From: Rhodosorus marinus CCMP1338
Taxonomy: Eukaryota; Plantae; Rhodophyta
Length of the DNA stretch: 64,000 nucleotides
Assembly (NCBI GenBank): GCA_029953675.1
Contig: JAMWBK010000004.1
Span: 1,550,001 to 1,614,000, forward strand
Direction: 5' to 3'
Part shown: positions 2,271 to 60,599 of the stretch, in pieces
How the letters are laid out: each line of letters starts with the position of its first letter
Position numbering within the stretch: position 1 is the first letter of the stretch
Translations under genes and position numbers: made by a program
The notes under the pieces: generated by a model
The model's input: only the letters and a program-made list of their open reading frames with translations
Database searches by the model: none
Told to the model about the DNA's origin: nothing

Positions 2271-2354
2271 GCAGCGATGGCCGAGTGGTCTAAGGCGGTG
2301 GACTCAAGTTCCACTGGGCGAAAGTCCGCGTGGGTTCGAACCCCACTCGCTGTA
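2271..2354 (+). tRNA. tRNA-Leu(CAA), intronless, long variable arm
   Basis: Acceptor stem GCAGCGA/TCGCTGT; D-loop GCCGAGTGGTCTAAGGC; anticodon arm GTGGA-CTCAAGT-TCCAC; variable arm GGGC-GAAA-GTCC; T-loop GGTTCGAACC; oligo-T about 30 nt downstream. Confidence 0.97.
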
Positions 2355-23430: not shown

Positions 23431-24691
23431 TTCAATATATATAATACAATAATTTTAATAGTTTAACCGCTACCCCGATTCTCGTCAGATTTCGTTGAAA
23501 AGTTTGTTTCGGGGTAGAAAATAGCACATTCTTGTAAGCCGGGAAAGGAAAAAGGCTATATTTTGGTAATTTAATTTGGGGGTTCATTCGGTCTTTTTGG
23601 AAGTTGACTTTTTTTAATTTGGTCTACTAAAGAGGAATTTTTAAATCATAATCGAGTGTTTTTCTTTCGCTTTTTTTTTTTGCAAGGGGGGAGGGGAAAG
23701 GGGGGAGAGGAGGTTGGAGTTTTCCGTCTAAATACCAAAGAAATGATGAAAGGAAACGCGTCAATCGTTTTAGGTGTTGTGGGTGTGTGTCCGCTGGGGA
23801 TTTTGAGATATGGTTTTGTTTTTTTTGTTTTTTTTGTGATGGGGAGAAAAAAGAAGGTGCAGGGAGTTGTTCGGGGATGGGCTTGAAAACTATACAGAAA
23901 GGGGGAAATTTTGCGGGAGAAGGTGTGTTTTGGGAGTCCTGGGGGTGGGTGGGTTAGAGGAGGTGGGGAGGAGGTTAGGGTTTAGTGTTTTTTTTGGGGG
24001 GGAGACGTGTAAGAAAGGAGAGATGTGGACGTGCAGGTGTTGATCCTTGGTGCGATCTCTTTGTTCTCTTCTTTTTGTCATGGTTGTTTTTTTCCTCTGA
24101 AGAAGCCGTGCTAAAGAACTAGAAACCACGTAGGAGAAAACGGGAAAGAGAGAGAAAAAGGGGGGGGGGGACTTGGTTTTTGCGCACGCGACGTTTTTGG
24201 TAGAGAGAGTGGGCGCATGTTGAAAGGGCTCTCAACGCCACGAGGAAGGTAGCCTGTGCTGGGGGGGGACTGGTATTTACGTAGGATTCGTTCGTAGGAA
24301 GTTGGAGTGGAGCGTGGGCGTGTTTCTTTAATTTCTTGGTTTTTAGGGGTAGTGGAAAAACGGAATTTTATTTGGCTTGGCAGGATGATCTGTCTGGTTC
24401 TGGTTTTTGCTCTACTTTGGCGTTTGTGTGTGAAGAAGTTACATACAAAAGTTCAGCACTGAAGGGTTTGGGGGTGTGGAGGTGTTTGACAGGTAGAGGT
24501 TGGGTGGGTAGCGTTGAAGGGGAAGTGCTGGGGAAAGGGGAGGAGTCTTTGTAAAGAGAGTCCCGTTGCTTTGTCCTGCCGGTCAGTGTCTGTGGTGTTC
24601 TCGTTTTTGTGGTATTTTTTGCTTGTGGGGTTTGACTTGGAGGGTAGGAGTGATCGAGATTAGGTATTCTTGAGTTGCGCGGACTGCAGTG

Positions 24692-30654: not shown

Positions 30655-33286
30655 GACTCCAACACTGATTTACAAGACTTCATTCCCGTCGGAATGGCTG
30701 AATTTTTTATGATTCAGTGACAGCAGTACTGTTGTCAGCAGTGCGGGCGTAGACGAGCAGCATGTGAATAAGGAATCGCCGGCACCAGCCTTTGTGCGAA
30801 TCCCGCACACCGAAGCCAGCTTGACCAATCCGATCTCGTCTTTCAGTCGCAAAGCTGAGCTAACAACTCAAAAAACAGACGTTAGGAGGGTGTGCCTTAA
30901 AAACCATTATTTGCAAGACAGATCGCCACGCAGGAGCTCTGGACTAGCCGCTTGCCAATCTTGGTACCCCTCGGAATGAATTTCGAACTCGCACACGATG
31001 AACGTAGATCATCAGACGAATAAAATCCACACGGGCTTTTTCTCTCCCTGCTGGCGGGGCGCATACTATACTTTGGCTGAGCAGGGACTGTGGGCTACTA
31101 CAAGGTGCTACCTTCTAAAGATCCTAACGTTAACCTGAGAACAGCAATGCTTAATCGAATTCGACAGTAGCCTCCTGGGTTCTCATAGTAGGCCCGTGGA
31201 AAGGGATAGGAAGCGAAAACCCTATGACATGAAGGAGCCCTCAAGGGAATCATTTTAGGTCAGTTGTAGACCACGGGGAAAGAGTCCTTAGGCGGGGATC
31301 TTTTGGATCTGTCGAAAACCGCGCAAAGAGTACACAGTTGTTTCGTCGAAGCCATAGAATTAAGGGGTGAATAGTCAGATTCAACTTTGTGAGAGCGGTT
31401 CCGTATAAGTCTTGCCTTCCTGGACTGACTCTTCATGTTCCTACCGTGAAATACCAGGAGCGGACAGACTATCCATACTTTCATCCTCAAGGTGTTTTCC
31501 TCATGAATCGGCTCAAGGCTTCGTTGATGGGGAGGGGCAGGGCTAGCGTGCATCTGTCATATGTGTAGTCAAGTCGTCTCTCAAAGAGCCGACTGCATAC
31601 GAGTTTCGTGCGAGGGCTCGTTCGCAAATGTCTGATCATGAAATTGTATATTGCACCCCCTGTTGGGGAGGGATACGGCGAGGAGGTTGATAATATTTGG
31701 TTCGCCGTTTAGTGTGCTTCCTCTCGGGGCTGTAGACACTCATTCGTAACCCCGCTTGACCCCATATCAATATCTCGCCCTGGGGCACACCAGTGCATCT
31801 GCAAACGGCTTGCCGTTTTGGTGAAGACGTGATTCTCATGTGTCAAGACCAAAAGATGCTGAAACAGGTGAAAGGAGGATTCTTGGACTACCAATCAGGT
31901 CGCCTTGAGACAGTTCGTCCCCCTATATAGGCTGATGAAGTCTCCTTCGCACTCTGACAGTCTCTAGGTATCAGACAAAAACAACAAAACTCATCGTTCC
32001 CGAACCTAATTTTCCTGCCACTGTCTACGCTAAGGACCCGGCAGCGCTCTCCCCCGCCCAAAGACAAGGCGGCTTCCGTCAAAGTAGAAACAAAAACAGC
32101 ACTACATGCTGAGTCTCAGTGTACAGTAGTTCAAAGTTCGGATTTCGTGTCATCCTCGCGTTAGTCAAGGATGATTCTCAGTCCAGGGTAAACAAAGTGA
32201 GACAACCCACCCGGAGAGGAAGAGGAAGCCAGACCAAACATTCACCTGGGAAGTTCCCCGAGGCCGAGACGAAAGAGATATCTACCCTCTAAAACTAAGG
32301 CCAATCGAACCGGCGCCACAGAAGGAATTCACGAAAGACAGAGAAGCTCAGCGAATGCCCTTGGGATCCCTTCATACTGTTCTCCCAAAAGTCTGAACCG
32401 GAAAACACCTTATCCCGTTTCCCCCCCATAATGGTCTACGTCCCCCAGGAACCCCCAAATCCAATCTCATTTATCATTTTCCAATTGAAATAACATTACA
32501 TCGACCGAAGCAGTCAAAACGAAAGTATTTCACCCCCCTTCAATGCAGAATATAAACAATTCGATTAATTTAATATATAATACAAATATCATATTATTCT
32601 ATAACAAAAAATAATTAAATATTCATCTAAAGACTAAATATATTAGTTTAATACAATAAGTCTCCGGATTGAATAGCATGATTATAATTTCATATGATAT
32701 ATTTACGTATTTTATAATAATATAAAACATTTATTAATTTGTATATAATAAATAAATTATTTGCGTCAAGTGAAAATAAATTAGGCTACCAACGTAATAT
32801 TTCAATAATAGATGAGCTAGATACTTAAGTTGATAATGTTTAAATCATTTACAATAAAAATAAAGATATATGTTTTATAACTTTACTGATAGAACACAAA
32901 TAAATTGTATTAATGTAATTAATATGAAACTTATTTTATTGATATTATCATTATTATATGATATATTTGTATCAAACAAAAGAATATTTTTATTATATAT
33001 GGAATATCGTATTTTATTTATGATATTTATGTTTATTGGCATTAGCGGCTCGGGGGGGTAAGGATATTGAGGAATGGGATTGGGAAATTTTCAGGGTTGG
33101 CGGTGTCGGGGGATGTGTTCGGGAGTGTAGGGGACGGTGAATTGGTTTGGGAGTAGTTTGGGGGGTGTTGGGGGGAAGAGTGGGTGGATAATGATGGACA
33201 TGGTAATGTATATGAGGTGACTGAGTACATTTTTGAAGGGTTTGTGAAGGATTTTAGGGAAGGAGAGTAGTTAAAGAGTTTCAAAG

Positions 33287-34798
33287 ATGGAGGGAATCTG
33301 TGGATTTGTGAACAGTGTTTGCGGTGTGAAAGGGAGGACTGAGGGCGGAGTTGTGAAGTGTAGGAGGAGGACGGTTCGGTGTTGTGAGGAGGGTGGGCCC
33401 AAGGCGGAGGGAAAAAAAAAAACTCCTGAGAGTTTGGAATTTGGAAACTGGAATGGCTTGAGTATTGGAACTCATCGAATGAAACTGTACGCTGGTTCGT
33501 CTAATCCGGAGTTGGCGGAGCAGGTGGCTAGGTATGTGGGAAAGGAGAAGACAAACCCTATCAAGAGGAAGAGGTTTGCTGATGGAGAGCTGTACATAAA
33601 ATTGGAGGACTCAGTCAGAGGATGCAACGTATTCCTCATCCAATCTACCAAGTTAGTGTTCTTTAACTCTTGCCCTCCTGTTGTCAAAGCCTCCGAAGGA
33701 GCTCCTGAATCCTAAAGTACTCCGTTCCTTCTCTGTTGCTTCTCTGAAATAGCAACCCTGGTAACGATAATATCATGGAATTGCTTCTGATGATTGATGC
33801 TTGTAGGAGAGCTCACGCTGCTCAGGTGAATGTCGTCATGCCGTACTACGGTAGGTTTCAAGTTCAAGATTCCGGCGAGCTCCCTCAACCGGCTTAGCAA
33901 CAGTTTCCTGCTTTCTCTCCATTCAGGATATGCACGAGCTGACCGTCTTATTGACCCTGCCCAAAAGCGAAGGGAAGCGTTGACTTCAAAGCTGGTCTCG
34001 AATATGATCACCGAGGCCGGTGCGGATAGGATCGTGGTAGTAGACATCCACTCACCGCAAACATGTGGCTTCTTCGATATCCCGCTGGATCACATTTATG
34101 GTTCTCCTGTACTGGTTGAGTATTTGAAGGCCAAGAAATACGACGACGTTGTGGTCGTAGCACCCGACGTTGGTGGAGTCGCTAGAGCTCGCGCCTTTGC
34201 AAAGGTAAGAGGTTCTGTTTGTACTCGACAAGTGGGATTGCGTGTCTTCCTCTGAGAGATGCTCGCACGCCTTTGATGGCTTTCTTGCTTACCTGGCGTT
34301 TTTGTGCTTTGGGAAAATGATATCCAGGCCCTCGATGACGCTCCTCTGGCGATCATTGACAAGCGTCGGGAGGCCCACAATGAGGCAAAGGTACTCAACT
34401 TGGTTGGTGATGTGTCCGGCAAAAGGGCAATCGTTGTGGATGATATGATCGATACGGCTGGAACGATATGTGAATGTAAGGCGGCGTGGGTGCAAAAAGC
34501 TTTTCTCTTCCAGCACAAGTTCGCTTTTGACTGAAGATGTTTCCGTTAAAAAATACACGCCACAGGTGGTAAGACCTTGAGAGAGAACGGCGCCCACGAT
34601 GTGATTGCGGTTGCAACACATGCGGTCTTTTCGGGCCCCGCCGTAGAGCGATTGTCAACTGGAGTTTTCTCTGAAGTCATCGTCTCCAATACCATCGATC
34701 TTGAACCTGAGAAAAGATTCAGGCAACTAACTATACTGTCAATTGCACCGTTGATCGGAGAAACCCTGTGGAGGCTCAACGAGCAGGTCATGAACTAA
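33287..34798 (+). CDS. PRS: Ribose-phosphate pyrophosphokinase (PRPP synthetase), plastid-targeted, 5 exons
   Basis: [65 protein letters not shown] and ATHAVFS joined across GT-AG introns. Confidence 0.97.
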
Positions 34799-37573: not shown

Positions 37574-40537
37574 CAGTCCATGAACTGTCTCCCACTCATC
37601 TCAAGCGCTGTTCAGCACACCCCGTCCCCCCAAACAAAACACACATGCCCGGTCTCATCCCAACGGGACAGACTCATTGCGAGCAGGAGTTCTCTGGCTT
37701 CTGGCCTCAAGCTTTTTCTCACTGTCTAAACATCATATCGAATGCAAAGTGAGAGAAAAGCTAAAAGCCAAACTAGGAGCCCAGCTCTCCCAGTCAAACC
37801 CCCACCACCCACCCCGATCCAACCCCGGCAGATCATAACGCCATTTTTACAAAAAGCCGTTGCAAAGAGAGGAAAACCGTTTCCCATTCTTCGAAGAGAT
37901 CCAAACGGCAGTGGGGGATGCGCTAGAAGGCAAAAAAACCCAAAAACAGGGGCTTTCCTGATAGAAAAAGAACCTTACATTTAAGAAGAGTGTTTCTCTT
38001 CAAAGACTAGTATGTATACCCAGACCTTGTGCAAACAAAGCCAACCTCTCTTCCTAAAGCCTTTCCTCGAATCCAAGCGTCTCCCCGACACCCAAAGTAA
38101 TATTCGCTACGCAACCACGCACTTGGCCAGATAAATTATTCAACAATTCCAACGTATTCGTGCAGCATAAAATATAGAAGAAAAATCGAAGAAGACTTGG
38201 AATTAATTAGTTAGAAAAGAAAATAGTTCAGTACGAGTTAGAAATATTCTTAATTTGTACTATTTTTCAATGTTGAGGTGGAAAGATTGAATAGTTCATG
38301 TTCTTGGGAGTAGATTGACGGGTGACGCAATGGCTTGACTTTGGCGGATTAGCGAGCCAAATGTGATTTGTCAGTAGCTTTGTTACTGAGTTTCTGGTTG
38401 AGAGCTCTTTGTTTTTGTTTTTTGGTTGTTACTGGATGTCGAAAAGTGGTGTGCTAGCCTGTGAGATAGGAGTTTTCGGCAGGAACGAGTATTGTCCAAA
38501 AACCAGGCGGGCTTAAGAGAGTGCATGCCGCAGACCTGGGCCATCCAAACCGATCTGTTCTGACTGGGCTCAATACTGCGGCTGCGGCACTCGGCCTCAG
38601 GTTTGTTTCCGCCTTCCGGTCTGTATGCTTCGAGAACGGTATGTTTTTGATCGGCACGGGACTGCTATACGTGAGCTTCCACGCAAAGATCAAGAGCTCC
38701 TCACTAGCAACCATCATCTCTCCAGTCTCAGACAAGGAATGAGCTCAACCCTGCGCGTACTCAGGAAGCACCATTCCAGGTCACCTCCTTGGTGATTAAT
38801 CCCGAAATATGTACAGAAGCCCTATCTAGTCTCTGGCAACATCACTCAAAAGCACAGGGGCGGGACTCAAAATAACTGAATATTCGTTCCAGCTCGCTAC
38901 TGTACGGACTGATTTGGAGACCTTGAGGGAGGAGAGGGTTACCTTTTGGTAGTCGACCAAGATCAAGCTGTTGGAACATCTCGTGTCCACTTAATGTCTA
39001 ATCTCTACGGAAGGCGCCCTGGGAGCTGGCCTGGGTGAAAACGCGACTGTTTCAATTCAGCTCCAGAAGGATTTTCGTAGAGCCACAAGCTGAGCGCTTC
39101 TAACCATGTACTTTGCCATGGACATGGACATGACCTATCTTCTAGTCAACACGCGTTGATAACTCAAATTTCCAAGAGGCTCTGTTCTTGCTCGCTGTGC
39201 TGTGGCCGAGGAACTAGCTTTGATCACCTCAGTATACGCTTAACATCAGTGTAAGACGGTCATCACGAGAACTCGCTGGTCCAGAGACAAGTTACCCCAG
39301 GATGAGGGTTTGCAACCGCGTCGCGCTGTGACCGCCGCATCTCCCAATTCCGCGTAGTGAACGGTCTCCATTTCCCTTTTCAAAAAACAACCGCGAGAAT
39401 TGTACCTTTCCTCTGGCACCAAGACGTACCGACCACGATCCATGTCAGCTGAAATCCTTGCGGTTTACCCCATTTCGCATCAGACCCGCTCCAGGTTACA
39501 TCAGCACGTACTGCCTCACCACACATGAGGCTATCATCAAGACGCGGTGCCGTATCCAATTCGACAACTTCGGGGGCGGGGAACAAAACATCAGCGCTAA
39601 TTTGGGTCTTTATAAAGGTTGATAAGAGCTCGAAGTTGTACTAAAAGGGTCAGAAGCTCTCAAATCTCGTGTCTCAGACATCCAACACCAGCCCCAAGCG
39701 TTAAGCTCCACCCGAGATCGACGAGATAGAAAAAGAGTTCGAGATTCCCCACACAGAGCAAACGTAATAAAATTTCCATATTAAAATAAAAACTCTAAGT
39801 ATTAACAAAACATTTCCAGCACGTATCCTAAAATTGTATTATTTTCAAGATTATCTCACCTGAGAAAAACTGAAATTAAAAAATATTATTCTAAAATATA
39901 TTGAATAGTATTATTTATATGAAACACATCGCCATCTCGATCGAACCCCCCAACGTCGACGAAAGCGATCGATCAACAGACAGACGGATGTAAAATTACA
40001 ATTGTACGTGAACAAAAACCAAATAAATAAATAAAACAGATATACGTATTATTATTTATCTTATTAAAATATCGTCGATTGAGGCGATACAAAACTGGGG
40101 TAAAATAAAGAATTTAGCAAATATTTATTGTAATATAGAAATTTTATAATGGTATGTCTTTTTATCTGCTTAGGGTTTTTTTTTTTGGTGGGGAGGATGA
40201 GCCTTTTCTCTCTTTTACTTTTGGAGAAAGAGGAGTTGGGGATGTGTTGGATTTTTTTAGGGTGGAGAGGGGGGAATTGGGAAGGATTACAAGGATAGAA
40301 GGACAGAGGTGAGAGTAGCAAAATTGCAGAGACTGTTATATTCTACATAAGTTTCTGGGTTAGGGGGTGAGAGGAAAAGGGGATCCGGGCGGAAGTAGTG
40401 GAGGAGACCGGGGAATTTCGGGTTGCAAGAATGGCTTGGATGAGGTGAAGCGTGTTTTGGATGGGGAACGAAGTGGGGCAGCTTCTGGAATTTTTTTTTG
40501 TTGGGTTGTTTGAAGAAATTGGTTTGTTTCTGTGACC

Positions 40538-42797
40538 ATGGGGAGTTTGGGTAGAACTGGATTTCAGGTCCAAGTTCGCGATGGGTTCGGCGTAAATTCT
40601 GGAAGTGGGCGGCTGCGGATCTGCGGCAGAGCGAGAAGCCGGGTGGGTATGGTGAAGAAGGGTGGGCGAAGGTTTCAGAGTAATCCTGTGGATTTTGGGG
40701 TGGTGGGAGTCGAGGATGAGGATGGGGATCTCTTGTTAGACGACCTCAAAGATCTGGGCGAGGAGGATGAGGAAATGGTGGAGGAAGGGGAGGAGGAGGA
40801 CGACGACGATGCGCTTGGGGACGATTTGGAGGTGATTGATTTGGGCAGTATGGATCCTGAGGAGTCGATTGAGGGAGATTCTGTCTTCGATGAGCCCAGC
40901 TTGGAGCTTCTCGGAGATGTCTTGGAAGGAGAAATCGATGACGGTGAGGGGTTCGAAGACGACGAGGATCTGATCGATATTAGTGAACAGGAAGATTCGG
41001 ATGGGGAGGATGGTAAGGGCACGCTCAGAGTCCTGATCAAAACACTTTGCCTCAATCAGCGCTCAGTGCTCAGCGCCCAGCTTCTGAAACCCCGTTTTCC
41101 ACAGAACCTCTCTCCTACATGCCCGGCATGCAACGCTTCCGATCGATCTCCCTGGACAGATTCGTAGAGGACAAAGAAGGCGGGTATATTCCAGCCATTG
41201 AGAGCGGTTTTGTTGGTGAGTTTACGAGAGTCTGGTCGGCCGCGATTCATCCAGATGCAAGATTCCGAGAGGCCAAGAACCAGTACGGCAGAGTGGGCGT
41301 GAACTTGGGATACAACTTCTCAGATTTTTTCGCGGACCCGGAAGCTGACCTCAGCGACATTCGACTGGAGGATGAGTCGATGATAAAGGTTTGCGACTGA
41401 AGTATAGTCAGCTCGTGGTGAGAGTAGCGCCTGATAAGCTCATTTTCCAACTCATATCTGAAAATTCAGGCAAAGTTGACGTACTTGGCGACCAGGTTGC
41501 CCTCGTTAAGCATCAGCACGAGCTGGGAGGTTGAAAATCCCGGAGCTCAAGGAACGCAATCATATTTTCACAGAACGATGGTTCCAGCGGATGTGGATGC
41601 GCTGGTTCAGAGACTAAAACCTCGATCGGATAAGAATCGAAAGGTTATTTTCAGGTGCATAGCCGGGTTTTTTGATGGCGAGAAGGAGGTGAGTAGATTC
41701 TGATTCTGCTTTTCAGCGAAGCACCTGCAACGTTTGTGATTACCTTTCGCGCTCTTGGACGTTGTCTCATCTTCCACTGCGATTGTCTTTCTTCTAGCTT
41801 CTGACGGAAGGAATATGCGAGGTCGCCATTCACTTCGCTTCCTCTCGGTATGCAAGTATTGCGGTGGCGAGTGCGCTTGACAATATGTTCAAGGAGCACT
41901 GGAAGAGCCTCAACCTCCAGTTCGTTGACCATGATAATGCCTCCGAATTCGACGAGGAGCTGAAAACGCAGGCCACCAGTAACAAGAGGGTCGGGGGTAC
42001 TTTGCTTAAGCAAAGAATTCTTAGAGAAGGGAAGGTACTCAACGGGGGGATCCTCAAGGTCTCTTCGTTCGTTAATCACATGGTAGGATCCAATGCTCAA
42101 CAGTGACGAGCCAGTCTTGTTTGCCATGTCGTAAGTCAGCAGTGCTTGTGAACATCTGCTCACAACCCTACTCTCTTCCAGGTTGACGTCGACCTCATGG
42201 ATATATGCGGGGAGGACCTCGCTGAGAGATTGCGTGACACAATGCCGAACAAGGTCTTAACAGTAGAGGCGACGGGCTTGATTCCTGCCTTGGCGGTTGG
42301 TAGAAAATTGAGCATCCCGGTTGTTTTCGCAAGGAAGTCGCGTCCAATTACCATCAGCGAGTCCTATCAGACCATGTATCAGAGCAAAACCAAGGGTCAG
42401 CTAAGCGAACTTATCGTCTCGAGAGAGTATCTCAACGGAGGCGACAGAGTGCTCCTCATTGACGACTTTTTGGCCGGCGGGTGAGCTCTACATGTGTTTC
42501 ATTTTATTCAGAGCCTCGGGGGGAGAACAACCCCTCATGGCCCCTTCGAGTTCTCGCTAACGGTTCTTGCTGTGCTTCTTCCTCGCCCGTTGTCACCTGA
42601 AAAATCCAAGGTCCACGTGTGAAGCACTGTTCAAACTCGCAAATATGGCCCAGGCAAGGGTTGTGGGGTTGGGAGTTTTGATTGAGAAGACGAAAGACGG
42701 AGGGAGAGCATTCCTCTCAGGGTATGACGTCCCGGTGGAATCACTGGCAAAAGTGACAATTAACGATGACAACACCTTGAGAGTAGATGACGATTGA
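40538..42797 (+). CDS. xpt: Plastid-targeted fusion: acidic region + degenerate Ham1/ITPase-like domain + xanthine phosphoribosyltransferase; 6 exons (40538-41012, 41105-41388, 41470-41688, 41798-42082, 42182-42480, 42611-42797)
   Basis: C-terminal about 190 aa match Bacillus-type Xpt (LKVSSFVNH, VLTVEATG, PVVFARK, SKTK, RVLLIDDFLAGG, GVLIEK, VESLA). All five introns are GT-AG and phase-compatible, giving one uninterrupted ORF. Confidence 0.88.
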
Positions 42798-43035
42798 TCT
42801 GACAAAGTGCAGAAAACGTTTGGAATGATAGCGCAGGTCCTGTTTTTCGTCGCCACCGCTTTCAAGGCATCCCGGATTGGCCTTGTTTCTTCGGTCACGG
42901 GAACGGCAGAAAAGTCTTAAGTTTCTCAAAATATTTACAACAACGAATAAACATAGTTGAATACACGTAAAATGCTACTCAGTCCTTCCTAGCCGTTCAG
43001 TCATCCCGCACGGGTTCCTCTTGCTCGCCCCGATC

Positions 43036-44298
43036 TCACCAAAGAACATAGTCTTTCGACCCAAACCGTTTAATCTTATTTTCAACGAAGTCCTTGGGAA
43101 CTCTCCGTAGCACCCTCTGCTGCTTCCGCATTCTTTCCTCTCTGTACTTCAGCGCCCCGGTATACATTTCCTTAATACCCTCCTTGCTGTACCAGTAGTC
43201 ATGGTGCAGTTGGAACTCCCGCTTCAAAACGTCTGCTTTTGCTTGTTCTGCTTGGCTCTCCTTAAGCTCAAAGTTCATTAGCGTCTTAAGAGAATCAAAG
43301 CCAAAGGTCTCTTCTGACGCTTTTACGATTTGATCCCAGGAATCGGACATGTCCTCGAGATCAGATTCGGGTACCTGCTCGTAAGGGGTCAACGGATTTG
43401 TTACGCTCGACCACAACAGTTTGAGAACAAAAGCAAAGCTTAGGAAATCGCGGTTACCTTCTCTCCAACGCTCAGTTTTGCTTCCCTTACGAGACGCTCC
43501 ATCATTGTCCCTAAGAACAGCTGGTTTTCGACACCAGAATTGTACCTTCCGGAACTCATCTTCACGATCTCTTTTTCCTTGTTAAACCCCCGGCCCGCGA
43601 TGAGCGCAACCGCATGCTTGGCAACGAAAGAAAGATCGCTTTCTCCAACATGATAAGTTGCAACCGCTATTCTATTTTCAGGATACCCAAGCTTTTCACC
43701 ATCATAGGAGAAGACCTTGAAAGTATCGAATTCAGTATACTTGAATACTTGAAGCAAATGCTTGGTGATTCTGGTGTATTCACTCTGTACATCCGAGTCC
43801 GTCAAGTCCTTCTCGATGTGGGGAGATTTCACGCCAGCGGTGTTCACAAAAATTAGAGACACTCGATCAGCGTTCTTGACCAAACTCTTCAAAATTTCGA
43901 ATCTAAACTAAAAGCAATACACAAAGCTTTTTTACCTTTTGATTTGCTTTTTCGACGACGCCAACTAACTGATCCAAAATACTATCAGCCACAGTTGTCG
44001 ACAACTGGGCTTCCTTCCTCATCCTCTCCTCCTCCTCCTTCTTCCTCGCCGCGATCACATTCTCGTCCATATCGTGTTCCCTCTTTTTCCTTAACGCTTC
44101 ATCTCTTTTTTTCCGTGCCAATTCCTCCTCATCCTCGTCCTCCAAGTTAAACAAATCAAACAACTCATCACCATCATCATCTCCATCTCCCTCCTTCTTT
44201 CCCCCACCTCCTCCGCTACTCACAAACCGCCTAGCTTCCCTACAACCCCTTCCAGCCATACCGTTCCATGACCGTCTTAACATCAATCTTAAAGCCAT
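43036..44298 (-). CDS. Hypothetical protein with a mitochondrial-type presequence and charged/coiled region, 3 exons
   Basis: MALRLMLRRSWNG...RRFVSS is an Arg-rich presequence. ORFs 43903-44403, 43440-43892 and 43036-43416 join through introns gttagt...tttag and gtaacc...gagcag. Confidence 0.7.
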
Positions 44299-44461
44299 AC
44301 CTCCCAATCCTCTTCTCCCGATCTTCAAAATAGAAACACTGTAATTCACCCCGGCAGCCACTCTTCTCCTCGGCCTTCCCTTTCCCCCCACGAACCGAGT
44401 CATCTATTAAATGGGTCACAACCTGATCTCATCGTGCCATCGTCCTCGCTCCTTTGCAAGA

Positions 44462-57814: not shown

Positions 57815-60599
57815 GGCATAAGAAAGAGTAAGATAAACAACAAGGGGCAGGGCTCAAGCTTTCGCTTCAAAAGACATTGCCCAGATTGTACAAGTTACAC
57901 GAACTTCGCTCGCCGCGAAATCGCGCTCAGTAGTTCATCTCAATTTTCTCCCCGCGCTACGCAACCAACGAACTTGCGAAGCCAACCATCCGACCCAAAC
58001 TCCCAGCGCGCTGCTGTCCAACCCGCAAACCCCTAAACGTTCTTTTCCAAATCCTGTCACAACCCAATCAGGAACGAAGCGCCAGCTTCCCCTCTAGAAC
58101 CCAGCCAATCCCTCCCAAGCACAGACTCGACCCAGGCCCAACACTTCTCCGGACGCCTCCAAACTCCTCTTTCCGCAATTCAAAACCTCCAGTAACAACC
58201 ACCACCACACCCCCCCGGTCCAAAAAAAAAATCCTACTTTAACAACCAAAACAACACACACAAATACAAACCTCTTCTTCCCCAACCGTGGCTCCAAACC
58301 CACCTCACAAAAGCTAAAAAACCTCCCTTCCAATTCCCTCAACCAACCCCCCCTAAAAAACTATCCACAATCCCCCTCTCCATACAAATTTCCACACCGC
58401 CCTTTTCTTATTCGGTTAAAAAGACACACATACACAAACTACAACCTCTATTCCCTCTTACTCTTTCCTCTCCCACTCCTCCTCCTCCTCCTCCTCCTCC
58501 ATCCCCACCCTCCCACTCATTCTCTCTTCCCGATGTCCTTAAGTACAAACCCTCCTCATCTCCTAAATGTCCATCTCCTTCTCTCTCCCTCTTTCCCACC
58601 CCCCCCACAACCAAAACTCGACTTTGGGGCCTTTCTCTCTTCTTCATATTCTTCATTTTTAAACTGAAAATCAAAAGAACTCGGTCGGTGCTGGTAAGAG
58701 AAGTCTAACCGACATCATCAACCCCGGGGTAGCGAGTCCCACCTCAAGCACTGATTGTATACCTCATCCGAAAAAAAGAATACTTCCGTGTAGAAAATCA
58801 ATTGAAAATAAAGGGCTTGCGTAATATATGTTTTTGATATATATTTTAGGTGTTATTTCTGCCAGATGAAAAAAGACGTCCGATATTGTCTGATAAAAGA
58901 TCGGATTAGAAAAATACGCTATAGTTGCTGGCTGGTAACGAGTCGATTGGAATGTAAAAATGTTGGCGGGGTGGAGACCAAGCGTGAACAGGCTCGACCT
59001 TTCGAAGATGATAAGAATTTAAGAGGTTTGATCCTCGTGAAAATTCGGGATCCCCGTGATTCTACAAGGAGGGGATGAACAGTTCTGACTGGCCCATCAT
59101 GTACCAGTTGGATCAATCACTGATATTGCTACTAGCGTAACCCTCTACTGGGCAGCTGCCTACTGCAGCGCCATCATTATCTAAGGGGACAGGTCCGGGT
59201 ATCACCGCGACGGGGGTCCCCAGACTAAAGCAACCCTAGCTAGTTCAATCACTGATACTTGTCCAATCTTTGGCGGAAACGAGGACGATCCATCCACGCC
59301 ACCTAAAACTCGCGTCGGGCCTAGGGGGGGGTATATAATGTAGCTCTCTGAAAACGCGAACGTAATTCAGTACAAAACAAGAATGTTGGTAAAAATATAC
59401 TAAAAACATGCTTTTGGGACGAGAGAAAGTTAGGATCGATCCAACGGGTTTTTTTGTTGTTTTCTGTATGTTTTGTGTAGAGAGACGCGCAGGCACTGAT
59501 TTGGCAACTTTTCAGAACGATGTGGGGGAGAGCCGATTAGAAGTAGAAGAAGGAATGGGACTGCGGCTGGTTTGGAGGGGGGCGGGCGGGTGGAAGCTTT
59601 GTTTGATTCACTTGTATTGCTTGGATCATAGGGATGTATTAAAGTCTGACCCTCGTATTGCTGAGTATTGTTCTACGTCGAGCTCTGATATGAGTGAAGC
59701 ACGAATAGAGACCTCGCTGATCAGGTCTTCCATACAATATCTCCCGGGCTGATTGCTGACTTCTCTTTTCTGAGTCTTTGGTTCAGAATCATTTGAACTA
59801 ATTGTCCGAAAACCCGCCGATCCGTACCAAGTCCTGACTGGTGCAGCATCATTCGGAGTAATCCGAAGATGGGGCGATCTGTTCTTCCGGGCTAGACCAC
59901 TGGTCTCAGGGGTTTAGGGGCAGCAGCATCCCCTTCAAACCCATAGCCTCTATAACTGCCTGAGCAATCCTTGAAAAACCTCCGTACGTATGAAGAACCT
60001 GTATCTCGCTCCCCCAGACTGTGTTTCGAATTTCTTAAAAGCAAGAGGCATGAGCAAACGTATACACATACACATCTACTTCGTCCGTATACTTCAATGA
60101 GTCTGGATCATAAGGTATGACTAAAATTGAAGAAACGGATTGGGAACACTTCAATCCCCTTTTTTGCAGCTCAGACGACTTCGGCTTCGCTCGGCCTTGT
60201 TTTCGTTTTTTTCTGGGTTGCAGGAGGAGCTACAAGGCTGAATTGTAAACAGGATCTATCGTACTATTTGTACTAATGAAACAGGAGTTTGTCGACTCCT
60301 GAACTTCAGTCCTTGGCAGCTCTTGGGTGGAAGCTTGGAACAGAGGATCAATTTGTGAAGATATCTACAGATTGCTTCAATATATGCTTACGCGTCCTTG
60401 AACATCACTGTAGACTTTTACGACGTGGATGTCGTGATCGTGCGAGGTCTGACTTGTTCGGCTCGTGGCTTTCTGGAATGGTTCTTTTCTCAGTGTTCAA
60501 GTTTTTGGAAGACAGTTGTTCTGTTTAGTGCGTGTCAGAAAAGCCTGCATAGGTGCATTTCCTGTGTTTCGTAGGTCTCAGAATGAAGTTGGTGCCGCT

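What the first reader, a model, noticed from the sequence alone, without database searches (positions are those of the whole stretch)
40538..42797. Plastid-targeted fusion of an apparently dead Ham1/ITPase domain to Bacillus-type xanthine phosphoribosyltransferase
Seen: the ORF track shows separate pieces, but phase-compatible GT-AG introns join them into one ORF (transit peptide, Asp/Glu-rich stretch, about 190-aa middle domain, Xpt). The key intron 41689-41797 puts ...FFDGEKE in frame with LLTEGICEVAI... and on into Xpt. Established: Ham1/ITPase/RdgB enzymes have N-terminal T-x-N-x-x-K-x-x-E, 'DL.E........I...K', a catalytic Asp in (V)EDT/DDS, 'R.A.F...I.Y.D......F.G...G.I', FG(W/Y)DP and SHR. 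The middle domain follows this order and spacing: HPDARFREAK, DLSDIRLEDESMIKAK, RKVIFRCIAGFFDGEKELLTEGICEVAI, SSR. However, the catalytic Asp position reads ISTSW, the FGxDP segment is missing and SHR reads SSR. Inference: a pseudo-ITPase tethered to XPRTase could act as a nucleotide sensor (ITP/XTP/GTP/ppGpp) or scaffold for plastid purine salvage. Bacillus Xpt is a known (p)ppGpp target and plastids make ppGpp. I do not know of a described protein with this architecture.
Basis: partly seen in the sequence, partly recalled or inferred. Interest (0 to 1): 0.85.

Follow-up and report, generated by a model that had tools for sequence, protein, structure and literature searches.

The report
Dead ITPase domain fused to XPRT
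This red-algal nuclear gene makes one protein in which a catalytically dead, shortened copy of the nucleotide-cleaning enzyme ITPase is joined to an intact xanthine-salvage enzyme, and the same unannotated fusion is conserved across algae with red-type plastids.

Summary
Six exons joined by five GT-AG introns (40538-42797, + strand) encode a 582-aa protein. It is identical to Rhodosorus marinus KAJ8905751.1, annotated "hypothetical protein". A 582-aa transcriptome ORF from another strain reads through all five junctions.

Residues 395-577 are a full-length XPRT (TIGR01744, above cutoff) with the catalytic/PRPP/ppGpp pocket intact.

The middle domain (about aa 196-360) is a true Ham1/ITPase homologue:
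- hhalign gives 98.7% probability.
- My own Ham1 HMM gives E 2.6e-11.
- Pfam PF01725 hits 17 of 32 relatives, though not the window's own sequence.
- The top 25 Foldseek hits of the AF2 model (pLDDT 85) are all ITPases.

The domain looks catalytically dead. The catalytic Asp is absent in 45 of 45 relatives aligned at that position. The C-terminal quarter (PRG/FGYDP/SHR) is missing in 47 of 47.

The fusion occurs in red algae, haptophytes, ochrophytes and Vitrella. Homologues from lineages with secondary plastids carry a signal peptide followed by Phe, which supports plastid targeting.

The role of the dead domain is only inferred. I favour a non-catalytic dimerising or regulatory module. The searched literature does not describe this architecture. 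The closest precedent is KomB, a dead-HAM1 dITP sensor.

The parts
40538..40708 (+). Start codon and N-terminal presequence (aa 1-57), a putative plastid transit peptide
   Evidence: The first 50 aa hold 11 K/R and 1 D/E. The NCBI model and the MMETSP ORF use the same start. Targeting is inferred, not shown.
40709..41012 (+). Acidic low-complexity region (aa 58-158, 51% Asp+Glu), to the end of exon 1
   Evidence: Composition. Homologues P0129, P0139, P0141 and P0142 carry a similar acidic stretch. It is the most variable region between the two Rhodosorus strains, with 16 of 101 residues differing.
41013..41104 (+). Intron 1 (92 nt, GT-AG, phase 1)
   Evidence: the junction is read through by P0290.
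41105..41388 (+). Exon 2 (aa 159-253): N-terminal half of the pseudo-Ham1 domain. It includes R211/E214, the equivalents of the Ham1 Lys and Glu of TxNxxKxxE, and K253 of the KA(K/R) helix.
   Evidence: hhalign, Ham1 HMM match over aa 214-338, family alignment.
41389..41469 (+). Intron 2 (81 nt, GT-AG, phase 0)
41470..41688 (+). Exon 3 (aa 254-326): pseudo-Ham1 core. I268-S269 (41512-41517) stand where Ham1 has the Asp-Asp pair that includes the catalytic Asp. R310 and F314 are conserved.
   Evidence: Identity to relative L001 is 71% at the protein level, with pN 0.19 against pS 0.88.
41689..41797 (+). Intron 3 (109 nt, GT-AG, phase 0), the junction the finding depends on
   Evidence: The true Ham1 P0138 reads RFRCIAVFTDGDEETLTEGICHGHIA continuously across the equivalent point. 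Transcript ORF P0290 spans it. Relative L001 has an intron at the same position.
41798..42082 (+). Exon 4 (aa 327-421): last Ham1-like strand (to about aa 338), a long helix (about aa 342-363), a variable linker (aa 361-391) and the start of the Xpt domain from aa 392-395, including N419/H420
42083..42181 (+). Intron 4 (99 nt, GT-AG, phase 0)
42182..42480 (+). Exon 5 (aa 422-520): Xpt core with E450, T452, R472, K473, S489 and the PRPP motif VLLIDDFLAGG (D515, D516, F517, A519)
42481..42610 (+). Intron 5 (130 nt, GT-AG, phase 2). It is retained in one transcript isoform, which then stops after DDFLAGG.
   Evidence: P0140 ends at DDFLAGG.
42611..42797 (+). Exon 6 (aa 521-582 plus stop codon): C-terminal part of Xpt with K547 of the IEK motif

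Best explanation
This is one nuclear gene of the red alga Rhodosorus marinus. Its 582-aa product has five parts: an organellar presequence, a roughly 100-aa acidic tail, a Ham1/ITPase-fold domain that can no longer hydrolyse ITP/XTP, a helical linker, and a complete XPRT of the Bacillus subtilis Xpt family.

Shown: the fusion exists, the middle domain is homologous to Ham1, the catalytic Asp and the C-terminal PRG/FGYDP/SHR part are lost, and both domains are conserved.

Inferred (about 0.8): the XPRT domain is the working enzyme, converting xanthine + PRPP to XMP + PPi. Like bacterial XPRT it is open to competitive inhibition by (p)ppGpp, because the shared PRPP/ppGpp pocket is intact.

Inferred (about 0.7): the protein works in the plastid.

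Inferred (about 0.45): the dead ITPase domain is a non-catalytic accessory module. ITPases are homodimers (my own knowledge). Bacterial XPRT is an unstable dimer whose Arg80 acts across the interface. I therefore propose that the module holds two XPRT domains together and tunes their activity. It may do so while still binding a phosphate-rich ligand through the retained Lys/Arg, Glu and Lys residues of the old triphosphate site.
For: One gene: the model equals KAJ8905751.1 and the transcript ORF P0290.

XPRT: TIGR01744 scores 190 bits against a cutoff of 164 over aa 395-577. The domain aligns end to end with B. subtilis XPRT structures 1Y0B/2FXV. N27, H28, E58, R80, K81, S98, D124, D125, F126, A128 and K156 are all kept; the only changes are S60T and N129G (residue list from bioRxiv 10.1101/2020.03.04.977603).

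Ham1 homology:
- The family profile hits RdgB structures at E 1e-3 and PF01725 proteins at E 1e-5 among 5.8 billion sequences.
- hhalign gives 98.65% probability, E 4.7e-16.
- My own Ham1 HMM gives E 2.6e-11 on the window protein.
- Pfam PF01725 hits 17 of 32 family members, best E 2.3e-9.
- The AF2 model (pLDDT 85, pTM 0.81) has top 25 Foldseek hits that are all ITPase/RdgB/Ham1, followed by Maf proteins.

Dead domain: 0 of 45 aligned members have Asp at the catalytic position, and HMM positions 146-199 are absent in 47 of 47.

Still constrained: pN 0.18 against pS 0.81 for the pseudo-domain core versus relative L001. Only 7 of 165 residues differ between the two Rhodosorus strains, against 16 of 101 in the acidic region. 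K55 is kept in 40 of 44 members, and R116 and F120 are kept.

Plastid: 17 of 19 M-starting members outside the red algae show a signal peptide followed by F/Y/W. The named taxa are exactly the red-plastid lineages.

Dimer rationale: XPRT is an unstable dimer and Arg80 acts in trans.

Precedent for a dead HAM1 acting as a regulatory subunit: KomB.
Against: No experiment or multimer model shows that the pseudo-domain dimerises or touches the XPRT domain. The window sequence alone does not reach any Pfam Ham1 threshold. Foldseek TM-scores are moderate (0.41-0.58), so the fold is remodelled. The N-terminal Thr and Asn of the phosphate loop are lost, and in the ochrophyte clade the Lys is lost too, so ligand binding may be gone altogether. 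Targeting of the red-algal protein itself rests only on composition; a mitochondrial location is not excluded. S60T in the XPRT pocket changes a residue that is invariant in bacteria, with unknown effect.
Confidence: 0.5

Rival explanations
1. The dead ITPase domain is an allosteric sensor. It binds a purine nucleotide or alarmone (ITP/XTP, GTP, (p)ppGpp, PRPP or PPi) and switches the attached XPRT, as the dead HAM1 subunit KomB does for its SIR2 partner.
For: KomB lost the catalytic Asp, kept its binding residues, senses dITP and is sometimes fused to its effector. KomBC structures appear among the Foldseek hits. In the window's clade, the equivalents of the Ham1 Lys (as R211), Glu (E214), the KAR Lys (K253) and the Thr after the lost Asp are kept. 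XMP and PPi are products of both ITPase (from XTP) and XPRT.
Against: The whole segment that holds the base in real ITPases (F149 of FGWDP and R178 of SHR in human ITPA) is missing in 47 of 47 members. KomB, by contrast, retains its binding pocket. Thr and Asn of TxNxxK are lost, and the ochrophyte clade also lost the Lys. No binding data exist.
Confidence: 0.3
2. The Ham1-like domain is still an enzyme, with a changed mechanism or substrate, making the protein bifunctional in purine metabolism.
For: A Glu often precedes the lost Asp (30 of 45 members), as in eukaryotic ITPA (VEDT; my own knowledge of the sequence). The domain is under purifying selection.
Against: The window itself has Ile-Ser at these two positions, so not even the Glu is present. 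No member has the catalytic Asp, and all lack PRG/FGYDP/SHR. The Glu44 equivalent is not conserved.
Confidence: 0.07
3. The domain is an evolutionary leftover that now serves only as a spacer or folding aid, with no specific role.
For: Catalytic and base-binding motifs are lost. The linker and acidic regions evolve fast.
Against: The domain is retained, always with Xpt, in every full-length family member seen, in red algae, haptophytes, ochrophytes and Vitrella. pN/pS is about 0.2. AF2 predicts a confident compact fold.
Confidence: 0.08
4. Two separate genes: an upstream gene ending before 41798, and an independent Xpt starting at an internal Met (MFKEHW..., aa 356).
For: Exon 4 contains an in-frame Met upstream of the Xpt domain. 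Some short database ORFs start inside the protein.
Against: A full-length 582-aa transcript ORF exists. A near-intronless fused gene is seen in L002. All complete homologues carry both domains. A true Ham1 sequence is continuous across the junction.
Confidence: 0.01

Closest known systems
Bacillus subtilis Xpt / XPRT (TIGR01744; PDB 1Y0B, 2FXV, 6W1I)
   Same: The C-terminal 190 aa align end to end. The PRPP motif and the residues that bind xanthine, PRPP and ppGpp are kept.
   Different: Bacterial XPRT is a stand-alone protein of about 190 aa. Here it carries about 390 extra N-terminal residues. S60 is Thr and N129 is Gly. The nearest prokaryotic sequences found are from Anaerolineae (48-57% identity), not Bacilli. 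None of 80 Anaerolineae loci has a Ham1 gene within 3 kb.
Ham1 / ITPA / RdgB non-canonical purine NTP pyrophosphatases (Pfam PF01725)
   Same: The fold and the order of elements match up to the strand ending G-x-I. Conserved features include the KA(R/K) helix, TGLPxxA, R..F and DGE..L.G motifs.
   Different: The catalytic Asp is replaced (Ser in the window). Thr and Asn of the N-terminal loop are lost. About 55 profile positions (PRG, FGYDP, KN..SHR) are missing. The window sequence itself scores below every Pfam threshold.
KomB, the catalytically dead HAM1 subunit of the Kongming anti-phage system (PDB 8ZSG, 9V0G, 9XVC)
   Same: Both are HAM1-fold proteins that lost the catalytic Asp and work with, or fused to, another enzyme. 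This is the precedent for a non-catalytic HAM1 module.
   Different: KomB has Asp to His and keeps the full nucleotide pocket. It is bacterial, pairs with a SIR2 NADase and senses dITP. The algal domain lacks the base-binding part, is eukaryotic and organellar, and pairs with XPRT.
PurR of Bacillus (a PRT-fold pseudoenzyme that binds PRPP and ppGpp)
   Same: Both are purine-metabolism proteins in which an enzyme fold has been turned into a non-catalytic module. PurR's PRT domain is the next-best PDB match to the Xpt domain (PMC8789054 listed).
   Different: In PurR the PRT domain is the dead part and is fused to a DNA-binding domain. Here the PRT domain looks active and the ITPase fold is the dead part.

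Membership tests
XPRT, Xpt type (NCBIfam TIGR01744 / NF006671) | Full-length match above the curated cutoff | tested here: met
   TIGR01744 scores 190.0 bits against a cutoff of 164.45. NF006671 scores 184.9 against 177. The match covers aa 395-577 and profile positions 3-186 of 191.
XPRT, Xpt type | Active-site, PRPP and ppGpp pocket residues (N27, E58, S60, R80, K81, S98, D124, D125, F126, A128, K156 of B. subtilis) | tested here: met
   10 of 11 are identical and S60 is Thr (residue list).
XPRT, Xpt type | Xanthine phosphoribosyltransferase activity | not testable with these tools
   Needs an enzyme assay.
Ham1 / ITPase (Pfam PF01725) | Match to the Pfam model at the gathering threshold | tested here: not met
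   The window protein has no PF01725 hit even at E <= 10 or E <= 1. 17 of 32 relatives do hit it, best E 2.3e-9.
Ham1 / ITPase | Homology by profile-profile comparison | tested here: met
   hhalign gives 98.65% probability, E 4.7e-16, over 122 columns. My own Ham1 HMM gives E 2.6e-11 on aa 214-338.
Ham1 / ITPase | ITPase fold | tested here: met
   The AF2 model has pLDDT 85.1. Foldseek ranks 1-25 are all ITPase/RdgB/Ham1, with E 1e-6 to 4e-4 and TM 0.41-0.58.
Ham1 / ITPase | Catalytic Asp (human D72, second Asp of bacterial ADD[ST]G) | tested here: not met
   The window has S269 there. 0 of 45 aligned family members have Asp.
Ham1 / ITPase | C-terminal base-binding motifs FG(W/Y)DP and SHR (human F149, R178) | tested here: not met
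   No residue aligns to Ham1 HMM positions 146-199 in 47 of 47 members. Importance of these residues from PMC9016069.
KomB-type dead HAM1 sensors | Asp to His at the catalytic site with the binding residues (Asn9, Lys12, Glu15) retained | tested here: not met
   The window has Ser, not His. Asn is lost, Lys is Arg, Glu is kept (KomB features).
KomB-type dead HAM1 sensors | Association with a SIR2 effector | tested here: not met
   The partner here is XPRT in all complete members.
Plastid-targeted nuclear-encoded proteins of the red lineage | Signal peptide followed by an aromatic residue at +1 (ASAFAP-type) in secondary-plastid homologues | tested here: met
   17 of 19 M-starting members outside the red algae show it, for example ASA|F in Triparma P0208 and SQA|F in Heterosigma P0175. 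The motif rule is from my own knowledge of the diatom literature.
Plastid-targeted nuclear-encoded proteins of the red lineage | Transit peptide on the window protein itself | tested here: inconclusive
   The first 50 aa hold 11 K/R and 1 D/E, with Phe at position 9. No predictor or localisation data are available.

The most novel reading that the evidence does not exclude
Red-lineage plastids carry an ancient pseudo-enzyme switch. A dead ITPase fold, conserved since before the secondary endosymbioses, senses a phosphate-rich purine signal (ppGpp, PRPP/PPi, or XTP/ITP through a rebuilt pocket) and gates xanthine salvage into the plastid guanylate pool. It would be a eukaryotic organellar counterpart of the bacterial KomB dead-HAM1 sensor.
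Probability: 0.25. Interest if true: 0.8.

Novelty: new variant of a known kind. Interest (0 to 1): 0.6.

Why it matters
XPRT of the Xpt type is usually treated as a bacterial enzyme. The ppGpp review PMC10107265 lists no Arabidopsis orthologue.

Here it appears as a conserved, apparently plastid-directed protein of red algae, haptophytes, ochrophytes (including a diatom) and a chromerid. In every complete member seen it is tied to an unannotated dead ITPase domain.

This has three consequences:
- It gives about 390 residues of "unknown" sequence in many deposited algal proteins a fold and an evolutionary origin.
- It adds a second case, after KomB, of the HAM1 fold being reused without catalysis.
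- It offers a concrete, testable link between purine salvage and plastid nucleotide or alarmone control in ecologically important algae.

A diatom protein annotated as XPRT was recently reported among the most induced proteins in anoxia (bioRxiv 10.64898/2026.07.20.739533). I did not verify that it belongs to this family.

Tried and rejected
- Pfam on the window protein and on the middle domain alone found nothing for the middle domain, even at E <= 10.
- A single-sequence search of 5.8 billion proteins with the middle domain gave no hits. Homologues were found only by searching from exon 4 plus Xpt and then with profiles.
- The first AF2 run, with a 15-sequence alignment, was poor (pLDDT 63.5), and its Foldseek TM-scores were only 0.3-0.45. 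It was replaced by a 32-sequence run.
- Exons 1-2 could not be found in the 800 nt upstream of exon 3 in relative L001.
- dN/dS could not be computed because synonymous sites are saturated. Only pN and pS are reported.
- A cluster look-up of the nearest bacterial Xpt proteins returned no organism names.
- The genome scan that named Anaerolineae used peptide patterns derived from Chloroflexi-like sequences, so it is biased.
- A search for a Ham1 gene next to xpt in 80 Anaerolineae loci found none, so there is no evidence for an operon origin of the fusion.
- The published version of the XPRT-ppGpp paper was not held; the bioRxiv version was used.
- Literature searches for the fusion or for "ITPase pseudoenzyme" found nothing relevant.
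- The two-gene reading is rejected (see rival explanations).
Full report
**1. What is in the sequence**

Three-frame translation of 40538-42800 shows coding pieces in different frames. Joining them at canonical GT-AG sites gives six exons: 40538-41012, 41105-41388, 41470-41688, 41798-42082, 42182-42480 and 42611-42797. The introns are 92, 81, 109, 99 and 130 nt long. The result is an uninterrupted 1749-nt CDS encoding 582 aa.

This model is identical, residue for residue, to KAJ8905751.1 "hypothetical protein NDN08_002256 [Rhodosorus marinus]" (UniRef100_A0AAV8UT63, "Phosphoribosyltransferase domain-containing protein"). The window is therefore nuclear DNA of the red alga Rhodosorus marinus.

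**2. Is it one gene?**

Four lines of evidence say yes.

- An MMETSP transcriptome ORF of 582 aa from another Rhodosorus strain (P0290) has 35 differences, none in Xpt. It is colinear and identical for eight residues on each side of four of the five junctions, including GFFDGEKE|LLTEGICE. At the first junction it shows ordinary strain substitutions.
- A sister isoform (P0140) stops after DDFLAGG, exactly as expected if intron 5 is retained.
- A related genomic contig (L001, Logan SRR22824290) has exons 3-6 with GT-AG introns at the same positions. DNA similarity is confined to the exons, and the downstream synteny is the same.
- A 73%-GC contig (L002) encodes the same domain order almost without introns. 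A genuine bacterial Ham1 protein (P0138) reads ...RFRCIAVFTDGDEETLTEGICHGHIA..., which is continuous across the point where intron 3 sits in the window.

The two-gene alternative is rejected.

**3. The C-terminal domain**

Residues 395-577 match the XPRT equivalogs TIGR01744 (190 bits, cutoff 164) and NF006671. They align end to end with B. subtilis XPRT structures 1Y0B, 2FXV and 6W1I.

I took the residues that line the active site / ppGpp pocket from bioRxiv 10.1101/2020.03.04.977603. The window keeps N27, H28, E58, R80, K81, S98, D124, D125, F126, A128 and K156. The only changes are S60T and N129G. The same holds for the other Rhodophytina and for the haptophytes. The domain therefore looks catalytically competent, and the pocket where (p)ppGpp competes with PRPP in bacteria is present. 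Both activity and inhibition are inferences.

**4. The middle domain**

The window sequence alone finds nothing in Pfam or among 5.8 billion proteins. A search with exon 4 plus Xpt recovered longer relatives whose N-terminal extensions align with the window across the junction. Profiles of these extensions gave the following results.

- They hit RdgB/ITPase structures 2PYU, 1K7K and 3TQU (E 1e-3 to 4e-3).
- They hit PF01725 proteins (E 1e-5 to 6e-4 for a 5.8-billion-sequence database).
- hhalign against an alignment of true Ham1 proteins gives 98.65% probability, E 4.7e-16, over 122 columns.
- A Ham1 HMM that I built from 34 bacterial Ham1 sequences matches the window protein at E 2.6e-11 (aa 214-338 against HMM positions 17-144 of 199). 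It matches every complete relative over roughly the same HMM range.
- The curated Pfam model PF01725 itself hits 17 of 32 relatives' middle domains (best E 2.3e-9), though not the window's.
- AF2 with the 32-sequence alignment gives pLDDT 85.1 and pTM 0.81. Foldseek ranks 1-25 are all ITPase/RdgB/Ham1 entries (E 1e-6 to 4e-4, TM 0.41-0.58), followed by Maf proteins, the sister family.

**5. Why the domain is dead**

In the hhalign alignment the window's I268-S269 stand at the Ham1 Asp-Asp pair.

Across 47 diverse relatives aligned to the Ham1 HMM:
- The catalytic Asp (human D72) is never Asp (0 of 45 aligned). It is Thr, Arg, Ser, Ala or another residue.
- The preceding position is Glu in 30.
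- Nothing aligns to HMM positions 146-199, which hold PRG, FGYDP and KN..SHR, in 47 of 47.

Several features are retained. The Lys of the KA(R/K) helix is kept in 40 of 44 members. The TGLP motif, the Thr after the lost Asp, R116 and F120 are also kept. In the red-algal and haptophyte clades the Lys/Arg and Glu of the N-terminal TxNxxKxxE motif are kept as well (R211 and E214 in the window). Whether the window's SSR corresponds to SHR cannot be decided from these alignments.

**6. The domain is constrained**

Against relative L001, the pseudo-domain core has pN 0.18 and pS 0.81. Xpt has pN 0.11 and pS 0.80. The linker has pN 0.40. Synonymous sites are saturated, so no dN/dS value is given.

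Between the two Rhodosorus strains, 7 of 165 residues differ in the pseudo-domain. This compares with 16 of 101 in the acidic region and 0 of 191 in Xpt.

**7. Distribution**

An exhaustive profile search of 1.84 billion cluster representatives found 159 proteins at E <= 1e-3 and 54 at E <= 1e-10. All complete members carry both domains in the same order. The weaker hits are ordinary Ham1 proteins of about 200 aa.

Named members:
- Red algae: Rhodosorus, Pyropia vietnamensis, Compsopogon caeruleus, Galdieria phlegrea and Cyanidium caldarium. For Timspurckia only an Xpt-only fragment (186 aa) was recovered.
- Haptophytes: Chrysochromulina tobinii (KOO22743.1, annotated "xanthine phosphoribosyltransferase") and Scyphosphaera apsteinii.
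- Ochrophytes: the diatom Stephanopyxis, Triparma and Heterosigma.
- The chromerid Vitrella.

These are exactly the lineages with red-type plastids.

The nearest prokaryotic Xpt sequences found are from Anaerolineae/Chloroflexota (48-57% identity). The scan is pattern-biased. None of those 80 loci has a Ham1 gene within 3 kb.

**8. Targeting**

The window's first 50 residues have 11 K/R and 1 D/E. A 51% Asp+Glu stretch follows.

In 17 of 19 M-starting members outside the red algae (named ones are haptophytes, ochrophytes and Vitrella), a hydrophobic signal-peptide-like segment is followed by F, Y or W. Examples are ASA|F, SQA|F and ISA|F. This is the known hallmark of import into complex red plastids (my own knowledge of the ASAFAP motif).

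Plastid location is thus well supported for the family and plausible, but not shown, for the red-algal protein.

**9. Mechanism**

Shown: the architecture, the homology, the loss of the catalytic apparatus, and conservation.

Inferred: the XPRT half salvages xanthine to XMP in the plastid.

For the dead half I favour a non-catalytic accessory role, for three reasons.
- Bacterial XPRT is an unstable dimer whose bridging-loop Arg80 completes the neighbour's active site and ppGpp site.
- ITPases are homodimers (my own knowledge).
- A fused dimeric module would therefore be expected to stabilise and tune the XPRT dimer.

A sensor role has a real precedent in KomB. KomB is a HAM1 protein with the catalytic Asp replaced; it binds dITP and activates a SIR2 partner. 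However, KomB keeps its nucleotide pocket, whereas the algal domain has lost the whole base-binding segment. ITP/XTP sensing specifically is therefore less likely than binding of a phosphate-rich ligand, or no ligand at all.

Residual catalysis and pure vestige are minor alternatives.

**10. Novelty**

The proteins are deposited, but they are annotated only as hypothetical, "phosphoribosyltransferase domain-containing" or "XPRT". Their precomputed Pfam content is PF00156 alone.

Full-text searches found no description of a Ham1-XPRT fusion or of an ITPase pseudoenzyme of this type. A 2026 preprint discusses a diatom XPRT that is induced in anoxia and traced to plastid acquisition, without mentioning the N-terminal domain.

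I rate this a new variant of known kinds: XPRT, and the dead-HAM1 module. It is of moderate-to-good interest.

Noticed in passing
L001:1-810 (relative of the window, Logan SRR22824290): Exons 3-6 of the orthologue are present with conserved intron positions. No counterpart of exons 1-2 (presequence, acidic region, N-terminal half of the pseudo-domain) is detectable in the 800 nt upstream. Either intron 2 is much longer there or the 5' part differs.
   Followed up: partly
Family members P0158-P0208 (ochrophytes such as Stephanopyxis, Triparma, Heterosigma); no window coordinates: In this clade the Xpt domain has N27D, H28S, E58A and A128S while keeping R80, K81, D124, D125, F126 and K156. The residues next to the base are changed, so substrate specificity may differ from xanthine. 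This clade also lost the Lys of the Ham1 N-terminal motif.
   Followed up: partly
P0161/P0342 (Cyanidium caldarium KAK4535740.1) and P0184: The XPRT pocket is degenerate in P0161 (for example D124G, R80A, K81D, S98A). In P0184 the Xpt match is only fragmentary and the pocket positions could not be aligned. In these members both halves of the fusion may be non-catalytic.
   Followed up: no
P0340 (Vitrella brassicaformis CEL96734.1, 1146 aa): The chromerid member's cluster includes a 1146-aa protein, much longer than the others. This suggests a further fused domain or a merged gene model.
   Followed up: no
window 40150-40537: The 388 nt before the start codon are strongly C-depleted on the coding strand (8.5% C, 36% G). 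Similar strand-asymmetric stretches recur elsewhere: C-poor at about 32800-33450 and 23700-24050, and G-poor at about 58100-58650 and 44000-44400. This may be a feature of promoters or leaders in this genome.
   Followed up: partly
window 42481-42610 (intron 5): Transcriptome isoform P0140 retains this intron and stops right after the PRPP motif DDFLAGG. The resulting protein would lack the last 62 residues of XPRT, including K547. Several other partial isoforms of the same Trinity gene exist.
   Followed up: partly
window 43036-43892, minus strand: The downstream neighbours are conserved in order in relative L001. The ORF at 43440-43892 corresponds to a gene with a mitochondrial ribosomal protein S28 (PF10213) hit in L001.
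   Followed up: partly
window 2271-2354, plus strand: ARAGORN reports a tRNA-Leu(CAA) gene, the only tRNA in the 64-kb window.
   Followed up: no
N-terminal regions of ochrophyte members (P0165, P0174, P0180, P0183, P0193, P0262): A conserved motif of the form (N)RWY..V...ATPDDVFWEEMERQR lies between the presequence and the acidic region. It has no counterpart in the window protein and no known function.
   Followed up: no
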